Virus record (IMG/VR): IMGVR_UViG_3300045971_000344
Location: 62,001-126,000 of that record
DNA: 64,000 nucleotides
Reading direction: 5' to 3' (one strand)
In this document: positions 16,730 to 24,257 of the stretch, in pieces
How the letters are laid out: each line of letters opens with the position of its first letter
Position numbering within the stretch: the first letter of the stretch is position 1
Translations under genes and position numbers: made by a program
The notes under the pieces: model-generated
The model's database searches: none
Told to the model about the DNA's origin: nothing
The model's input: the letters and a program-made list of their open reading frames with translations, nothing else

Positions 16730-18709
16730 ATGAAGTTTTCAGATGTAGTAGCTGATCTAAAGAAAAGCGGATTATCCGAGGCTAAGGCTCTTGAAGTCGT
16801 AAAGACCAGACTTGCCGCAAAGGGGCACGAGCTCACCCCTGTAAAGATGCAACTGTTCCATAATACTTGGGAGACTACAGAAGCCCCGGTGGTTAATAAG
16901 CCCCAAAAGACTAAGAAAGAAAGGGCGGTTAAACCGTCAGGGCCTGTAGTAATTAATCCCTTGGTCGCCCCAAGCATAGATAACGCGGACGAACTTTTTA
17001 AAGCTCTTGCTACTTTTGGACTCGCAGTAATAGCCTGGACAAATGGGGTGAAGTTAGACCCAATTAGACAGCTCTTGTCAACTAATAAGCCCACCTTAGA
17101 TAGCTTCTTCAAAAACTCTAAGATGAATACAACCGCGTATAATGTAATATGCGGGTTAATTTTAGAGAAAAAAGCGTACAGCGCAGACAAAAGAAAGGCC
17201 GATGTTACCGCCTTTGGAAATGATTTAAAAGGAATACCTGATATTTTGTCTTCAAGGCAATATAAGTTATTACCAGCCAAAGTAACCTATCTAAAGAACA
17301 TAGCAGGATATTTGAAATCTAGTGCACCCACTGATAATGCTTATAAAAATATCGTAAATAAGGCCTCCTCTATTAGGGTCCCTCAAGCATCCGCCTTATT
17401 TACGTCCCACGTTGCCGAAAAGGTTAATCTTCCAGCTAACATAGGCGAAATGGTAACCAACTATAAAAAATTAAATAAAAAATTCGGTGGGAATGAAGGT
17501 TACACTATTCCAACAGACACTTTGAAAAAATATAGAGATACTCCTACAAAGGAATACACTAATTATTGTGCAATTGAAAAGGATTTGAATGCTCAACTTA
17601 AGTTGTTGACCCGGGTTGTAGTAGATAGTAGTGGGCAACAGACGATGGATGTGGAAGACTTTAAGAAACAGATAAAAGCAAAAGGTTTTGACTTTAATAA
17701 AGTTCCCGTTGGATTCATTGGTCGTATTGATGCTCAAGGAAAGTTCTATACAAAAGAAGGGTACTTGCTAAAGGACCAGCCTTCTGGTGTAATAAAAACA
17801 ATGAGTACAAAAGCGTATAATTCTAAAGATGGAACTGGTGCATACTGTGTGTACTTAAAAGCTGGTGGAAAGGCCCAACGTTGTTACACCATGATGCACC
17901 ATAGCGGTAAGCGAGAAGATAAGAAACAAGATATCGTAGACGATTTTATTAAGAATATGGTCGCCTATAGAAAACACTGGATGAAGGACTTAAAGGCTGG
18001 GTCCAAGATCTTAACAGACAAAGCAATAGCTGCATTGGTTATTGAAATAATGTTCCAGCTCTGTCCGAGACCGGGCTACGAAGAACATGGAAACAATAAG
18101 AAATTTGAAAATACAAAAGGGTTTATTTATCTTACCCGAGGAGAAGTTAAGCTCGAAGGTAACGATATTCACTTTAAATACACAGATAAGAACGGACCTC
18201 AGCATTTAATTTACACTAAGGGAGAAATGTACGGATCAGTTAGTGATGATACCCTTGTAGTTAACTGCTTAAAGAAATTAATGGAGAATAAAGATAAAGA
18301 TGAGTATTTATGGAAATACAGTGGAGATAACGTTGACTACGACCAGATTAAGAATTATGCAAGATCTGTAATACCCGGGTTTAACTTACATAAGTTTAGG
18401 AATTCTAAAGCGTCAATGATGGCAAAAGACATGCTAGGTGCGTGTAAACTCCCTAAAGGTTCTACCCCTAAAGAAGTATCAGATTACTACATGGATGTAA
18501 TGACAAAGGTAGGAGAAGAACTAGGTCATAGATCGGGTGAAGAAGCGAGTCCCTCAATGGCAATTTCTTCATATGTCTTAAAAAGCATCTCCAATGAGTT
18601 CTTTGATAGGTATGATGTTAGTCCTACTCAAAAAATAGCTGCTCAGATAAATACTGCAGAAGCTTCATCTTCGGGGTTGACGGTCCACATAGGCCGAAGA
18701 AAGTCATGA
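16730..18709 (+). CDS. type IB DNA topoisomerase-like protein with long N-terminal extension
   Basis: pentad R (CPRPG), K (FKYTDKNG), R (HKFRN), H (LGHR), Y (SSYV) in poxvirus TopIB order and spacing. Confidence 0.8.
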   Translation: MKFSDVVADLKKSGLSEAKALEVVKTRLAAKGHELTPVKMQLFHNTWETTEAPVVNKPQKTKKERAVKPSGPVVINPLVAPSIDNADELFKALATFGLAVIAWTNGVKLDPIRQLLSTNKPTLDSFFKNSKMNTTAYNVICGLILEKKAYSADKRKADVTAFGNDLKGIPDILSSRQYKLLPAKVTYLKNIAGYLKSSAPTDNAYKNIVNKASSIRVPQASALFTSHVAEKVNLPANIGEMVTNYKKLNKKFGGNEGYTIPTDTLKKYRDTPTKEYTNYCAIEKDLNAQLKLLTRVVVDSSGQQTMDVEDFKKQIKAKGFDFNKVPVGFIGRIDAQGKFYTKEGYLLKDQPSGVIKTMSTKAYNSKDGTGAYCVYLKAGGKAQRCYTMMHHSGKREDKKQDIVDDFIKNMVAYRKHWMKDLKAGSKILTDKAIAALVIEIMFQLCPRPGYEEHGNNKKFENTKGFIYLTRGEVKLEGNDIHFKYTDKNGPQHLIYTKGEMYGSVSDDTLVVNCLKKLMENKDKDEYLWKYSGDNVDYDQIKNYARSVIPGFNLHKFRNSKASMMAKDMLGACKLPKGSTPKEVSDYYMDVMTKVGEELGHRSGEEASPSMAISSYVLKSISNEFFDRYDVSPTQKIAAQINTAEASSSGLTVHIGRRKS

Positions 18710-19680: not shown

Positions 19681-19827
19681 ATGTTAGTAGAAGTCGAAAT
19701 TGCTAAGTTGTCCGCTAAGGTAGATCATCAGGAAAGAAAAATAGAAAAATTGGAAAATGAAATTCTTTCTCTAAAAGAAAGACTAATGATTCTTGATACA
19801 CATGTCTTTGACTTGCAGAAATCATAA
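19681..19827 (+). CDS. small leucine-zipper-like protein (48 aa, not in ORF track)
   Basis: AAAGGAG RBS; MLVEVEIAKLSAKVDHQERKIEKLENEILSLKERL. Confidence 0.6.
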   Translation: MLVEVEIAKLSAKVDHQERKIEKLENEILSLKERLMILDTHVFDLQKS

Positions 19828-19849
19828 TTTATATTTGAGTGGTGTATTA

Positions 19850-19986
19850 CGGTGCATCACTAGCGACACCTGCCCAATGTTAGATACAGTTGTACCCTTA
19901 GTGTCTTGCACATCCAATAGGGAACTTCTCCAAACAAAGACATTTGGATACAAGTGGTGCGACAACCCGGAGAGACGGGTTAACTA
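19850..19986 (+). ncRNA. unnamed structured element, copy 1
   Basis: shares GCGACACCTGC, CCCTTAGTG, AAGTGGTGYGACA and GGAGAGAC hairpin with 21408..21548. Confidence 0.55.
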
Positions 19987-19991
19987 AATGA

Positions 19992-21386
19992 GTGAGAGTG
20001 GGATGGGGTATGCCAAAGATATTTGACTGTTTTACGTTCTTCAATGAGTTTGAACTTCTGGAAATTCGTTTGAACGAGTTAAAAGATGTTGTAGACACTT
20101 TTGTTATCTGCGAATCCAGTTATACCTTTACGGGCAAACCTAAGCAGTTGTTATTGGCAAATAACTTGGGCGCCCTTAAAGGGTTTAACGTAAAATTACT
20201 GGCGTACAGCCCACACACTCCAGCTGAAAATGCTTGGGATAATGAACGGGGGCAAAGGGCATATCTAAAGGTAGGTCTGGACGAACTGGCTATTGAAGAC
20301 AATGACTTGGTTATGCTTACAGACGTGGATGAGATACCATCTGCCGAGATCATAAGAAAGATTAATCCAATTCAGATAATTGATTTAGAAATGGAGACAT
20401 CTTATTACTATGTGAACAATAGGACTAGCGAAGTTTGTTACGCGCCTAAGCTATTTAAATCACACTGGTTAAAAAGCTTTAGCATTGACCAAATACGGAA
20501 CATGAATCCTGGGTATTTCGTAGCAAATTCAGGAAATCATTTTTCTTACTTAGGTGGGATTGAGCGTATTAAAGATAAAATTGAGTCGTTCTCCCACCAA
20601 GAGTTTAATAATGAGGCATTTAATACGACTGAGAAATTAGAGCAGAAATTGAGCTCTAACGTAGATCTGTTTAATCGTAAATTGGATTATCGGACAATAC
20701 CTTTGTCTGCAGTAAGGAACTGTCCACAGTATTTATTGGATAATCAAGAACGCTTTTCACACATGATAAAGGTTACCCTACCTCAGTTGGATCTACCTCA
20801 GGTTACGCTAATTGCTATTGATTGTGTTGACCCAGTTAGAGCAGAACGAGTCTTGGAGATTTGTAAGGGTCATTGTAACTTCGGGTCAATAAAGCTCTTA
20901 ACCTCTGGTTATACCTCTAGTGAGTACGCAGTAAAGATTTCTAATATAGGATCTCTTAAGGAGTATACTGAGTTTATACTAACGGAACTGTATAAGCACA
21001 TAGACACCGAATACGTTATGCTTGTCCAGCACGATGGGTACATCTTGGATTCGTCTAAGTGGGACCCGGAATTCTTAAAATATGACTATATTGGGGCACC
21101 TTGGGATTCAAGGTTATTAGACCAGAAGGTTTCAAATAACTACTTGGTCGGTAATGGGGGCTTTAGCTTAAGGTCCAAAAAGTTATGCAAGCTCACGGCT
21201 AAAATGAGTCATAGATTGTTGAGACATGAATTTGAAGATGTTTCGATATGTCAGCTCAATAGGTCATATCTAGAAACCTTCGGTATTAAGTACGCGCCCG
21301 TAGAGCTCGCAAGACAGTTTAGCTGGGAAACTGAGAGTAGACCACCTGGTGGTACTTTTGGGTTTCACGGTAAGGACAAACTTTAA
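19992..21386 (+). CDS. glycosyltransferase family 17-like domain fused to DUF5672-like domain (start probably ATG 20010)
   Basis: FDCFTFFNEFELLEIRLNEL..VDTFVICES; QHDGYI...WDPEFLKYDYIGAPW...VGNGGFSLRSKK. Confidence 0.85.
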   Translation: MRVGWGMPKIFDCFTFFNEFELLEIRLNELKDVVDTFVICESSYTFTGKPKQLLLANNLGALKGFNVKLLAYSPHTPAENAWDNERGQRAYLKVGLDELAIEDNDLVMLTDVDEIPSAEIIRKINPIQIIDLEMETSYYYVNNRTSEVCYAPKLFKSHWLKSFSIDQIRNMNPGYFVANSGNHFSYLGGIERIKDKIESFSHQEFNNEAFNTTEKLEQKLSSNVDLFNRKLDYRTIPLSAVRNCPQYLLDNQERFSHMIKVTLPQLDLPQVTLIAIDCVDPVRAERVLEICKGHCNFGSIKLLTSGYTSSEYAVKISNIGSLKEYTEFILTELYKHIDTEYVMLVQHDGYILDSSKWDPEFLKYDYIGAPWDSRLLDQKVSNNYLVGNGGFSLRSKKLCKLTAKMSHRLLRHEFEDVSICQLNRSYLETFGIKYAPVELARQFSWETESRPPGGTFGFHGKDKL

Positions 21387-21407
21387 GTACGTGCTGCATA
21401 AACCGCG

Positions 21408-21548
21408 GAGTTGCGTACTGCGACACCTGCCTGACACTAACGTAGTATAATGTTTTCCCTTAGTGCTCGTAGCACGTGCAGGGGCATTTATCCACCAATG
21501 AAAGTGTTTAGATAAAAGTGGTGTGACACGCTGGAGAGACAGCGATAA
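21408..21548 (+). ncRNA. unnamed structured element, copy 2
   Basis: diverged copy of 19850..19986 with compensatory stem changes. Confidence 0.55.
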
Positions 21549-21569
21549 GCATTTAGGCTATAATTATAC

Positions 21570-21644
21570 CACGGGTTACCTCAGTGGTAGAGGACATTCC
21601 TCATAGGGATAGAAGTCGCAGGTTCGATTCCTGCACCCGTATCA
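21570..21644 (+). tRNA. tRNA with CAT anticodon (Met or Ile2), atypical
   Basis: cloverleaf: ACGGGT/ACCCGT acceptor, CCTC/GAGG D arm, CTCATAG loop, GCAGG-TTCGATT-CCTGC T arm; no intact CCA. Confidence 0.85.
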
Positions 21645-23844: not shown

Positions 23845-24257
23845 GGGGGCGTAAAGGTTTCGACTGGCGGTAATAGATATTAGTTGCGCTCGGAGGATGA
23901 TGGTTGGCCTCTTGAATAACCCATCACTTATTAATTGCCAACTTTGCAAATGCAGTAGCAGACAACTATGGTTTTGAGGCTCGCCTCGCTGCCTGAGTTG
24001 TAACAATCCCTACAGAAAATCGTAGGTACGGTAAGTAGTAGATAACATTTGTAGCTACTCGCCGCGTAACAGAAGATGTGGATGGTTAGCCGCCCACTGA
24101 CTAATGAACTCCAGGTGTTGGTCTGGCTAAACACCGACTAGGTGGGAAAGATTTGTCTATTTTGTTAATAGCCACCGAAATACTAAATAGACTATGAGCG
24201 TAGGGACTATATTGAAAAGCTGTTAGGACGTGGGTTCAACTCCCACCGCTTCCACCA
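23845..24257 (+). ncRNA. ssrA: tmRNA
   Basis: 5' GGGGGCGTAAAGGTTTCGAC, 3' GTGGG-TTCAACT-CCCAC CGCTTCC ACCA, internal tag ORF 23937..23996 ANFANAVADNYGFEARLAA*. Confidence 0.95.

What the first reader, a model, noticed from the sequence alone, without database searches (positions are those of the whole stretch)
19850..21548. Unnamed ~140-nt structured RNA in two covarying copies that precisely bracket a glycosyltransferase gene
Copy 1 (19850..19986) ends just before the gene and copy 2 (21408..21548) starts just after it. Conserved blocks, in order: GCGACACCTGC, CCCTTAGTG, AGGG, TCCA, GATA.AAGTGGTGYGACA and a terminal hairpin with a GAGAGA loop. Stems covary: CCG/CGG versus GCTG/CAGC around GAGAGA; GTG/CAC versus GTGCT/AGCAC inside CCCT/AGGG; 5' GGTGCATCACT or GTTGCGTACT pairing with AGTGGTGYGAC. 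I cannot match it to any riboswitch or ribozyme I know. It could be a new ribozyme or processing element that cuts this transcript next to the tRNA cluster, or a recombination substrate through which the GT cassette was inserted (inference).
Basis: partly seen in the sequence, partly recalled or inferred. Interest (0 to 1): 0.75.

Follow-up and report, generated by a model that had tools for sequence, protein, structure and literature searches.

The report
New widespread phage RNA domain
The two elements flanking the glycosyltransferase gene are real copies of a small folded RNA domain that no catalogue lists, found in hundreds of phages, mobile elements and some bacterial small RNAs, always at the boundary between two RNA units; its function is still unknown.

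Summary
Both copies are real (19863-19980 and 21420-21544, + strand). A third, minimal 44-nt copy lies about 30 kb upstream in the same 295-kb phage. They belong to a large family that Rfam 15 does not hold.

A model built only from unrelated phages finds both window copies at E about 1e-10. It also finds 117 copies in 78 viral loci, 64 in 57 bacterial loci, and copies in 43 of 101 Marinobacter species genomes.

The conserved core is about 45 nt:
- helix P1 (ACACC/GGUGU plus two conserved non-Watson-Crick tiers);
- an apical loop that tolerates inserts of 0 to about 90 nt;
- an invariant GUGAC;
- hairpin P2 with an invariant G-GAGAGA-C loop and strong covariation in its stem.

Copies sit on the transcribed strand at RNA-unit boundaries: right after capsid-gene stop codons, inside tRNA arrays, before terminase genes, between ORFs, and as the 3' domain of GacA-box-driven sRNAs in Marinobacter.

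Function is not established. My best guess (0.35) is a transcript end-cap or punctuation domain that forms and protects RNA ends. Ribozyme, decoy and aptamer readings remain open. The recombination-cassette idea has no support.

The parts
19808..19835 (+). sigma-70-like promoter (TTGACT, 16 nt, TATATT). It would start transcription about 15-20 nt before copy 1.
   Evidence: 10 of 12 consensus matches. The total number of such sites in the region is no more than chance, so this is a lead only.
19863..19980 (+). Copy 1 of the RNA domain: conserved core plus an insert of about 80 nt seen only in this phage.
   Evidence: R1 35.2 bits, E 2e-10. R2 48.4 bits. Sequence read.
19866..19870 (+). Copy 1, P1 5' strand (ACACC).
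   Evidence: Pairs with 19956-19960 (GGUGC; the outermost pair is A-C in this copy). Model alignment; family pair counts.
19956..19963 (+). Copy 1, P1 3' strand plus the GAC triplet that is invariant across the family (GGUGCGAC here; most copies read GGUGUGAC).
19965..19980 (+). Copy 1, hairpin P2. The stem is ACCCG/CGGGU and the loop GAGAGA is at 19970-19975.
20010..21386 (+). Glycosyltransferase gene (GT17 domain fused to DUF5672). It lies between the two copies and is not part of the RNA family.
   Evidence: Pfam Glyco_transf_17 at 1e-28 and DUF5672 at 7.5e-21.
21420..21544 (+). Copy 2 of the RNA domain: conserved core plus an insert of about 90 nt.
   Evidence: R1 36.6 bits, E 7e-11. R2 48.6 bits. 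The unconstrained minimum-free-energy fold already contains P1 and P2.
21423..21427 (+). Copy 2, P1 5' strand (ACACC).
   Evidence: Pairs with 21520-21524 (GGUGU).
21520..21527 (+). Copy 2, P1 3' strand plus invariant GAC (GGUGUGAC).
21529..21544 (+). Copy 2, hairpin P2. The stem is CGCUG/CAGCG and the loop GAGAGA is at 21534-21539.
21570..21643 (+). tRNA-Met (CAU), 26 nt after copy 2. This is the typical neighbour of the family.
   Evidence: A same-strand tRNA follows or precedes the motif within 1-115 nt in 13 of 87 viral loci.

Best explanation
What it is (confidence about 0.95): both elements are transcribed-strand copies of a large, uncatalogued family of small self-folding RNA domains carried by phages, prophages and P4-like elements, and co-opted into some gammaproteobacterial sRNAs.

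The core is about 45 nt:
- Helix P1: a G-C pair, two conserved non-Watson-Crick tiers (C/U/G opposite A, and G/A opposite G), then ACACC/GGUGU.
- An apical loop U-G-C...A-G-U that accepts 0 to about 90 nt of extra hairpins.
- A 1-5-nt linker.
- Hairpin P2 with a covarying stem and an invariant G-GAGAGA-C loop.

The window's copies are the core plus two of the longest inserts known.

How it most likely works (confidence 0.35, inferred): it is a transcript end-cap or punctuation domain. It folds on its own at the junction between two RNA units. P2, often followed by a U-tract, forms or marks a 3' end. The compact P1-P2 fold shields the neighbouring RNA from decay or read-through. In this phage it would insulate the GT mRNA at both ends, from the upstream operon and from the tRNA/tmRNA cluster.

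Shown here: the family, the fold, the covariation, the strand and the positions. Inferred: termination and protection.
For: Family and fold:
- 117 hits in 78 viral loci, 64 hits in 57 bacterial loci, and 3 copies in the phage's own genome, all on the + strand.
- 97.6% of cells pair, against 80% in shuffles. Three P2 pairs show 4-6 pair types. P1 shows A-U to G-C changes in 7 sequences and C-G to A-U in 2.

Boundary position:
- 24 of 79 viral clusters begin 4-12 nt after the stop codon of a roughly 352-aa major head protein.
- tRNAs lie 1-16 nt from either end, always on the same strand.
- Other copies lie upstream of terS/TerL, including Pseudomonas phage Itty13 and Morganella phage IME1369_02.
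- Two copies bracket an unrelated ORF in an Acidobacteriota genome.

3'-end role:
- A U-run starts 0-6 nt after P2 in 51 of 163 last or solo copies. The background rate is 9.7%, and it occurs in only 2 of 17 internal copies of arrays.
- P2 stems are slightly longer where a U-run follows (p 0.017).
- In Marinobacter the domain is the 3' end of a roughly 110-nt unit. A GacA-box-like palindrome precedes it in 14 of 24 loci (about 0.05 expected per locus), and a U/C-rich tract follows it.

Other:
- The 40-kb carrier phages have no T7-type RNA polymerase gene, so the host polymerase reads these sites.
- In the window, a promoter-like site sits just before copy 1.
Against: - The window's own copies have no U-tract after P2. 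Two thirds of all copies lack one.
- About 20 nucleotides are invariant across phyla. That is more than a terminator or a passive decay block should need. It is the signature of a catalytic or ligand pocket, or of a site for an ultra-conserved partner.
- Copies between tightly packed tRNAs need no end protection.
- Arrays of up to five copies would also fit a dosage (decoy) role.
- No transcript ends were observed. The metatranscriptome contigs were uninformative.
Confidence: 0.35

Rival explanations
1. Trans-acting stable small RNA or decoy. The domain is released from abundant late transcripts or tRNA precursors and titrates a highly conserved host factor. That factor could be a global RNA-binding protein such as CsrA/RsmA, a ribonuclease, or the ribosome.
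For: - Arrays of 2-5 copies occur.
- The domain is embedded in tRNA arrays, where tRNA processing would release it.
- It sits in the 3' UTR of the capsid message.
- The P2 loop always carries GGA.
- In Marinobacter and one Pseudomonadales genome it belongs to GacA-box-driven units that also carry ANGGA hairpins, the hallmark of RsmA sponges (PMC2375449).
Against: - CsrA was found in only 4 of 10 non-gammaproteobacterial genomes that carry the motif, though these are incomplete MAGs.
- GGA is not enriched in the inserts: 75 observed against 70 expected, and fewer than expected in predicted loops.
- Known CsrA specificity explains neither the invariant P1 tiers nor the rest of the loop.
- The complex prediction was not folded, so it is no evidence either way.
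Confidence: 0.22
2. New class of small self-cleaving ribozyme that cuts polycistronic phage transcripts at gene-gene, gene-tRNA and tRNA-tRNA junctions.
For: - The core is 45 nt with about 20 near-invariant nucleotides in loops and junctions across phyla.
- It has no consistent gene partner, a phage and mobile-element habitat, tandem copies, and positions exactly at unit boundaries. Known small ribozyme classes share this profile (my own knowledge).
Against: - It matches no ribozyme model in Rfam.
- In Marinobacter the P2 loop region has drifted towards a canonical RsmA-type CAGGGA site. This implies the domain is kept in the mature sRNA.
- Cleavage could not be tested here.
Confidence: 0.15
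3. Riboswitch-like aptamer, either cis-regulatory or a metabolite sponge. The conserved internal loop and the docked GAGAGA loop would bind a small molecule and control the P2 terminator or the start codon that follows.
For: - The conservation pattern and the optional variable hairpin fit an aptamer.
- In tandem arrays only the last copy carries a U-run.
- About 25 copies have an ATG 11-17 nt after the loop with no other Shine-Dalgarno sequence.
Against: - No downstream gene class is consistent.
- Copies lie between tRNAs.
- There is no family-wide alternative pairing between the P1 3' strand and either flank: 3% of copies reach p of 0.05 or less, which is chance level.
Confidence: 0.1
4. RNA polymerase-binding processive antiterminator, working like the HK022 put RNAs.
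For: - It has two stem-loops.
- It lies in leaders of long late operons (before terS) and ahead of long untranslated tRNA and ncRNA regions that host RNA polymerase reads.
- One carrier belongs to the Hendrixvirinae, the subfamily of HK022.
Against: - HK022 itself has no match to the model.
- P2 often looks like a terminator.
- Tandem arrays, and a position at the 3' end of sRNAs, are not expected for an antiterminator.
Confidence: 0.06
5. DNA-level element: a recombination, integration or packaging site through which the GT gene was inserted.
For: Two paralogous copies flank one gene. Some family members lie near terminase genes, where cos or pac sites occur.
Against: - Stems keep pairing through G-U pairs, which do not pair on the other strand.
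- All nearby tRNAs are on the same strand as the motif.
- Most flanking ORFs are co-oriented: 75-78% in viral loci.
- There is no link to glycosyltransferases anywhere else in the family.
- The two copies are only 74% identical.
Confidence: 0.02

Closest known systems
HK022 putL/putR antiterminator RNAs
   Same: Small phage RNA of two stem-loops. It acts on the transcript of the operon that encodes it and occurs in more than one copy per genome (PMC9378689).
   Different: No sequence or structure match: the model finds nothing significant in HK022. The put RNAs lie just downstream of early promoters. This family sits mostly after capsid genes, in tRNA arrays and at sRNA 3' ends, often with a U-tract.
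Phage T4 stable RNAs C and D (rnaC, rnaD) in the tRNA cluster
   Same: Small stable RNAs annotated only as species 1 and species 2 RNA, with no stated function. They are encoded on the same strand as phage tRNAs and directly beside them.
   Different: No similarity to the model. The T4 RNAs are 119-139 nt. As far as I know they are restricted to T4-like phages.
Rsm/Csr sponge sRNAs (RsmX/Y/Z, CsrB/C)
   Same: In Marinobacter the domain is part of a GacA-box-preceded unit of about 110 nt with ANGGA hairpins. The P2 loop itself carries GGA (PMC2375449).
   Different: No Rfam Rsm or Csr model matches. Phage copies carry one GGA each and no GacA box. Several carrier genomes show no CsrA. The P1 domain has no counterpart in known Rsm RNAs.
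Intrinsic terminators and intercistronic stabiliser hairpins (for example REP elements)
   Same: Intergenic, on the same strand as the genes, directly after highly expressed genes. A GC-rich hairpin is followed by a U-run in about 31% of copies.
   Different: About 20 nucleotides and a second helix are conserved across phyla. Two thirds of copies, including both window copies, have no U-tract.
Small self-cleaving ribozyme classes of phage and mobile-element contexts (hammerhead, twister, twister-sister, pistol, hatchet)
   Same: Similar size, conservation confined to loops and junctions, scattered gene context, and tandem occurrence.
   Different: No match to any of their Rfam models. Catalysis is untested.
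Exoribonuclease-resistant RNAs (xrRNAs) of flaviviruses; a functional analogy only
   Same: Compact, sequence-constrained folds placed in tandem in a 3' UTR to stop exonucleases (my own knowledge).
   Different: Different kingdom, different enzyme direction and different fold. No experiment supports nuclease resistance here.

Membership tests
Any Rfam 15 family (4227 models) | Covariance-model score at or near the family threshold. | tested here: not met
   No hit on the copies at gathering thresholds. No hit at E up to 10 on the window copies, on three minimal copies in L004, or on the Marinobacter unit.
HK022 put RNA | Sequence and structure homology to putL/putR. | tested here: not met
   Model R1 on the whole HK022 genome gives only a 7.4-bit, E 0.45 hit, antisense inside the portal gene.
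HK022 put RNA | Binds the RNA polymerase beta' zinc-binding domain and suppresses termination. | not testable with these tools
   Needs transcription assays.
Intrinsic (Rho-independent) terminator | GC-rich hairpin immediately followed by a U-tract. | tested here: not met
   Not met for the two window copies: no U-run follows P2. Met in 51 of 163 last or solo family copies, against a 9.7% background.
Rsm/Csr sponge sRNA | Several ANGGA motifs in unpaired loops, and a GacA (UvrY) box upstream. | tested here: not met
   The window copies have one GGA each and no convincing box. GGA is not enriched in family inserts. The features are met only in the Marinobacter units.
Rsm/Csr sponge sRNA | The host encodes CsrA/RsmA. 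| tested here: inconclusive
   PF02599 was found in 4 of 10 non-gammaproteobacterial carrier genomes, but these are incomplete MAGs. The host of the window's phage is unknown.
Known self-cleaving ribozyme classes | Match to the class consensus. | tested here: not met
   No Rfam hit.
Self-cleaving ribozyme (new class) | Site-specific self-scission in vitro. | not testable with these tools
   No biochemical tool was available. The RNA contigs gave no end information.
Riboswitch | An expression platform whose pairing competes with the aptamer. | tested here: not met
   Complementarity between the flanks and the P1 3' strand is at chance level: 3-4% of copies at p of 0.05 or less.
Riboswitch | A consistent class of downstream genes. 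| tested here: not met
   Downstream genes include head-tail proteins, terminase, ParB/DpdA-like proteins, primase, OLD nuclease, transposases, a 2OG-Fe(II) oxygenase and tRNAs.
tRNA or tmRNA | Recognised by ARAGORN or by the Rfam tRNA and tmRNA models. | tested here: not met
   Only tRNA-Met, tRNA-Gln and the tmRNA were called in the window.
The new family itself (ACACC/GGUGUGAC plus GAGAGA-loop domain) | P1 helix, invariant GUGAC, and a P2 hairpin with a G-GAGAGA-C loop, scored by a model built without the window. | tested here: met
   35.2 and 36.6 bits with R1. 48.4 and 48.6 bits with R2, filters off, and nothing else in the window.

The most novel reading that the evidence does not exclude
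The domain is a new functional RNA class in its own right. It could be a new small self-cleaving ribozyme, a bacterial counterpart of exonuclease-resistant RNAs, or an aptamer for a universal metabolite or second messenger. Phages and mobile elements would deploy it in arrays, and Gac/Rsm-controlled sRNAs would have recruited it.
Probability: 0.3. Interest if true: 0.9.

Novelty: new member of a known kind. Interest (0 to 1): 0.68.

Why it matters
A 45-nt RNA fold has about 20 nucleotides held constant across very different carriers: a 295-kb pond phage, 40-kb podovirus- or siphovirus-like phages, lambdoid Morganella and Providencia phages, a Pseudomonas phage, P4-like islands, and the chromosomes of nearly half of the sampled Marinobacter species. 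Rfam has no entry for it, and I found no paper describing it.

Conservation of this kind has in the past marked ribozymes, riboswitches or binding sites for core machinery. The family offers:
- a well-defined new target for RNA biochemistry;
- an explanation for the unannotated intergenic islands after phage capsid genes and inside phage tRNA clusters;
- an unrecognised Gac-controlled sRNA type in Marinobacter.

Cultured systems exist for direct tests: Marinobacter, Pseudomonas phage Itty13 and Morganella phage IME1369_02.

Tried and rejected
Identity searches that found nothing:
- Rfam at gathering and permissive thresholds on four different regions: nothing.
- blastn of the region against 50,697 phage records: no match. 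A lambdoid-phage copy against 5,426 E. coli genomes: no match.
- HK022 put RNAs and T4 rnaC/rnaD: no match to the model.
- Literature searches by sequence words and by topic: nothing relevant.

- The first pattern scan could have been chance, with roughly 20 hits expected. Six of its 14 hits were. The rest proved real on inspection and by model.
- A search for relatives of the window-specific insert returned 11 hits, all chance matches in coding DNA.
- Synteny test of the GT-cassette idea: the neighbouring 314-aa protein has no relatives. GT relatives carry only single domains and no motif.
- Base composition of the GT gene does not stand out from its surroundings.

Tests of function:
- T7-type RNA polymerase promoter or terminator idea: spacing within the motif varies, and the carrier phages have no such polymerase gene.
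- General CsrA-sponge idea: weakened by the missing CsrA and by the lack of GGA enrichment.
- Complex prediction of CsrA with the RNA: not folded, no verdict, and no evidence either way.
- Public RNA runs: the window's phage was found only in two DNA pond metagenomes. Metatranscriptome contigs laid on a relative's capsid-motif region broke at strain differences and say nothing about RNA ends.
- Resemblances to 5S rRNA helix III/loop C, to the Shine-Dalgarno helix and to the 16S A-site were considered from memory. I dropped them because they rest on 4-8-nt words and the Rfam 5S model gave no hit.
Full report
**Observation.** The window is part of a 294,944-bp IMG/VR virus record.
- The two elements align at 74% column identity.
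- They flank an ORF that is a GT17 glycosyltransferase fused to DUF5672. Its probable start is 20010 and its stop is 21386.
- tRNA-Met follows copy 2 by 26 nt. tRNA-Gln and a tmRNA gene lie further on.
- Rfam 15 finds nothing on either copy, even at E up to 10.

**A large family.** A pattern scan of IMG/VR gave 14 loci. Eight carried the same three blocks plus a hairpin with a GAGAGA loop, often in tandem. I built a covariance model (R1) from eight copies in five of those contigs, without the window.
- R1 scores the window copies at 35.2 and 36.6 bits, E about 1e-10.
- It finds a third, minimal 44-nt copy at G000:51261-51310.
- A second pattern hit more than 120 viral contigs. R1 confirmed 117 copies in 78 of them.
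About 150 chance hits were expected, yet R1 confirmed 64 copies in 57 of 80 loci. These were mostly Gammaproteobacteria, with Acidobacteriota, Gemmatimonadota, Planctomycetota and Bdellovibrionota as well.
- A second model (R2), with filters off, finds only the two known copies in the window.
- Cultured carriers include Morganella phage IME1369_02 and Providencia phage PSTRCR_117lys (both Hendrixvirinae), Pseudomonas phage Itty13 and Mannheimia phage 587AP2.

**Anatomy.** The core is about 45 nt.
- A 5' GCG precedes P1 (ACACC/GGUGU).
- The apical loop reads U-G-C...A-G-U.
- An invariant GAC follows P1, then a 1-5-nt linker.
- P2 has an invariant G-C closing pair and a GAGAGA loop.
- Variants such as GGAACGCC with GGCGUGAC suggest that the GCG and GAC flanks extend P1 through two non-canonical tiers to a closing G-C pair. 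I read this from the sequences; it is not tested.
- Pairing is 97.6% against 80% in shuffles. Three P2 pairs show 4-6 pair types. One P1 pair switches A-U to G-C in seven sequences.
- Inserts in the P1 apex range from 0 to about 90 nt.
- The window copies carry about 80-90 nt that no other sequence in IMG/VR shares.

**Context.**
- 24 of 79 distinct viral clusters begin 4-12 nt after the stop codon of a roughly 352-aa major head protein. In complete 40-kb genomes of this lineage, which lack a T7-type RNA polymerase gene, the copies cluster at that one site.
- Others precede terS/TerL.
- tRNAs lie within 115 nt in 13 of 87 viral loci, always on the same strand and as close as 1-16 nt.
- In bacteria the neighbours are mobile-element genes: a P4-type primase, an OLD nuclease and transposases.
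- In an Acidobacteriota genome, two copies bracket an unrelated ORF, exactly as in the window.
- A U-run follows P2 in 31% of last or solo copies, against a 9.7% background.
- About 25 copies have a start codon 11-17 nt after the loop without another Shine-Dalgarno sequence.

**Marinobacter.** 43 of 101 species genomes carry one or two copies. There the domain is the 3' part of a conserved unit of about 110 nt.
- A GacA-box-like palindrome lies 100-125 nt upstream in 14 of 24 loci, against about 0.05 expected per locus.
- Two hairpins with ANGGA loops come next, then the domain.
- Its P2 reads CAGGGAGAG and is followed by a U/C-rich tract.
- These are the marks of Rsm-type sRNAs (PMC2375449), yet no Rfam Rsm or Csr model matches.
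- One Pseudomonadales genome has a perfect box 69 nt before a copy.

**Function.** The domain is clearly an RNA, transcribed with its neighbours and placed at the junction of RNA units.
- I favour an end-cap or punctuation role (3'-end formation and protection; 0.35). My reasons are the capsid-stop position, the U-tract enrichment restricted to last copies, and its use as the 3' domain of sRNAs.
- The cross-phylum invariance is more than such a role needs. A decoy or protein-binding role (0.22), self-cleavage (0.15) and ligand binding (0.10) therefore stay open.
- A general CsrA link is weakened by the absence of CsrA in 6 of 10 carrier genomes and by the lack of GGA enrichment in the inserts.
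- A put-like role (0.06) lacks homology.
- The DNA-cassette idea (0.02) has nothing in its favour beyond the flanking itself.

**Limits.**
- No transcript ends could be read.
- No relative of this jumbo phage was found.
- The complex prediction returned no verdict.
- I cannot exclude that the motif has been described in a paper outside the searchable library.

Noticed in passing
G000:C1:51261-51310 (= L016:4261-4310), outside the window: Third, minimal 44-nt copy of the domain in the same phage. It fills the 100-nt gap between a lysine-rich 228-aa ORF and the next gene. Its P1 carries a C-A tier (ACCCC/GGAGU).
   Followed up: yes
window 23845-24257: Phage-encoded tmRNA gene (Rfam 121 bits; tag peptide ADNYGFEARLAA), downstream of tRNA-Met and tRNA-Gln.
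   Followed up: no
window 21536-21564: A promoter-like site uses GAGACA from the P2 loop and stem of copy 2 as its -35 element, with TATAAT ending 6 nt before tRNA-Met. The tRNA might therefore be transcribed without a leader. The total number of such sites in the region is at chance level.
   Followed up: partly
window 16730-18709: A 659-aa ORF with a eukaryotic-type topoisomerase IB catalytic core (Pfam 2e-10; phrog_23460), in a jumbo phage.
   Followed up: no
L004:1999-2028(-), L018:8614-8641, L021:2535-2562(-), L033:914-941(-), L060:7053-7080(-) and 7 more loci: A second conserved RNA-like module: an outer stem encloses AAGGCUAG, a small hairpin and CCUCAAACC. It ends about 15-25 nt upstream of a copy of the domain in each locus inspected (L004, L021, L033, L060), and its pattern occurs in 12 motif-bearing loci. 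It has no Rfam match.
   Followed up: partly
L199:6461-6640(-), L276, L278, L280, L283-L286, L292 and others: An apparent uncatalogued Gac/Rsm-type sRNA of Marinobacter: a GacA-box-like palindrome, two ANGGA hairpins, then the domain as 3' end. There are one or two per genome, as with RsmY and RsmZ.
   Followed up: partly
L135:3540-4460 (Pseudomonas phage Itty13, MW460249): A non-coding island of about 900 nt upstream of terS. It holds two copies of the domain, repeated CCGAU...GCAUCGGA hairpins and a tRNA-like sequence that ARAGORN did not call. One copy overlaps an annotated opposite-strand hypothetical ORF (QRE00608.1), which may be a miscall.
   Followed up: partly
L188:3764-4487(-) (Acidobacteriota MAG): Two near-identical minimal copies bracket a 191-aa ORF, the same arrangement as around the GT gene in the window.
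   Followed up: partly
L004, L057, L085 (between copies of the domain): A conserved long hairpin module (UUGUGCAAGCG...GGGCACAA) recurs inside the post-capsid RNA islands. A short hairpin plus U-run sits just before the next gene's ATG.
   Followed up: no
L016:385-1956 (G000:47385-48956): Transposase-like ORF (phrog_10081, 1e-29) in the jumbo phage, 2.3 kb upstream of the third copy.
   Followed up: no
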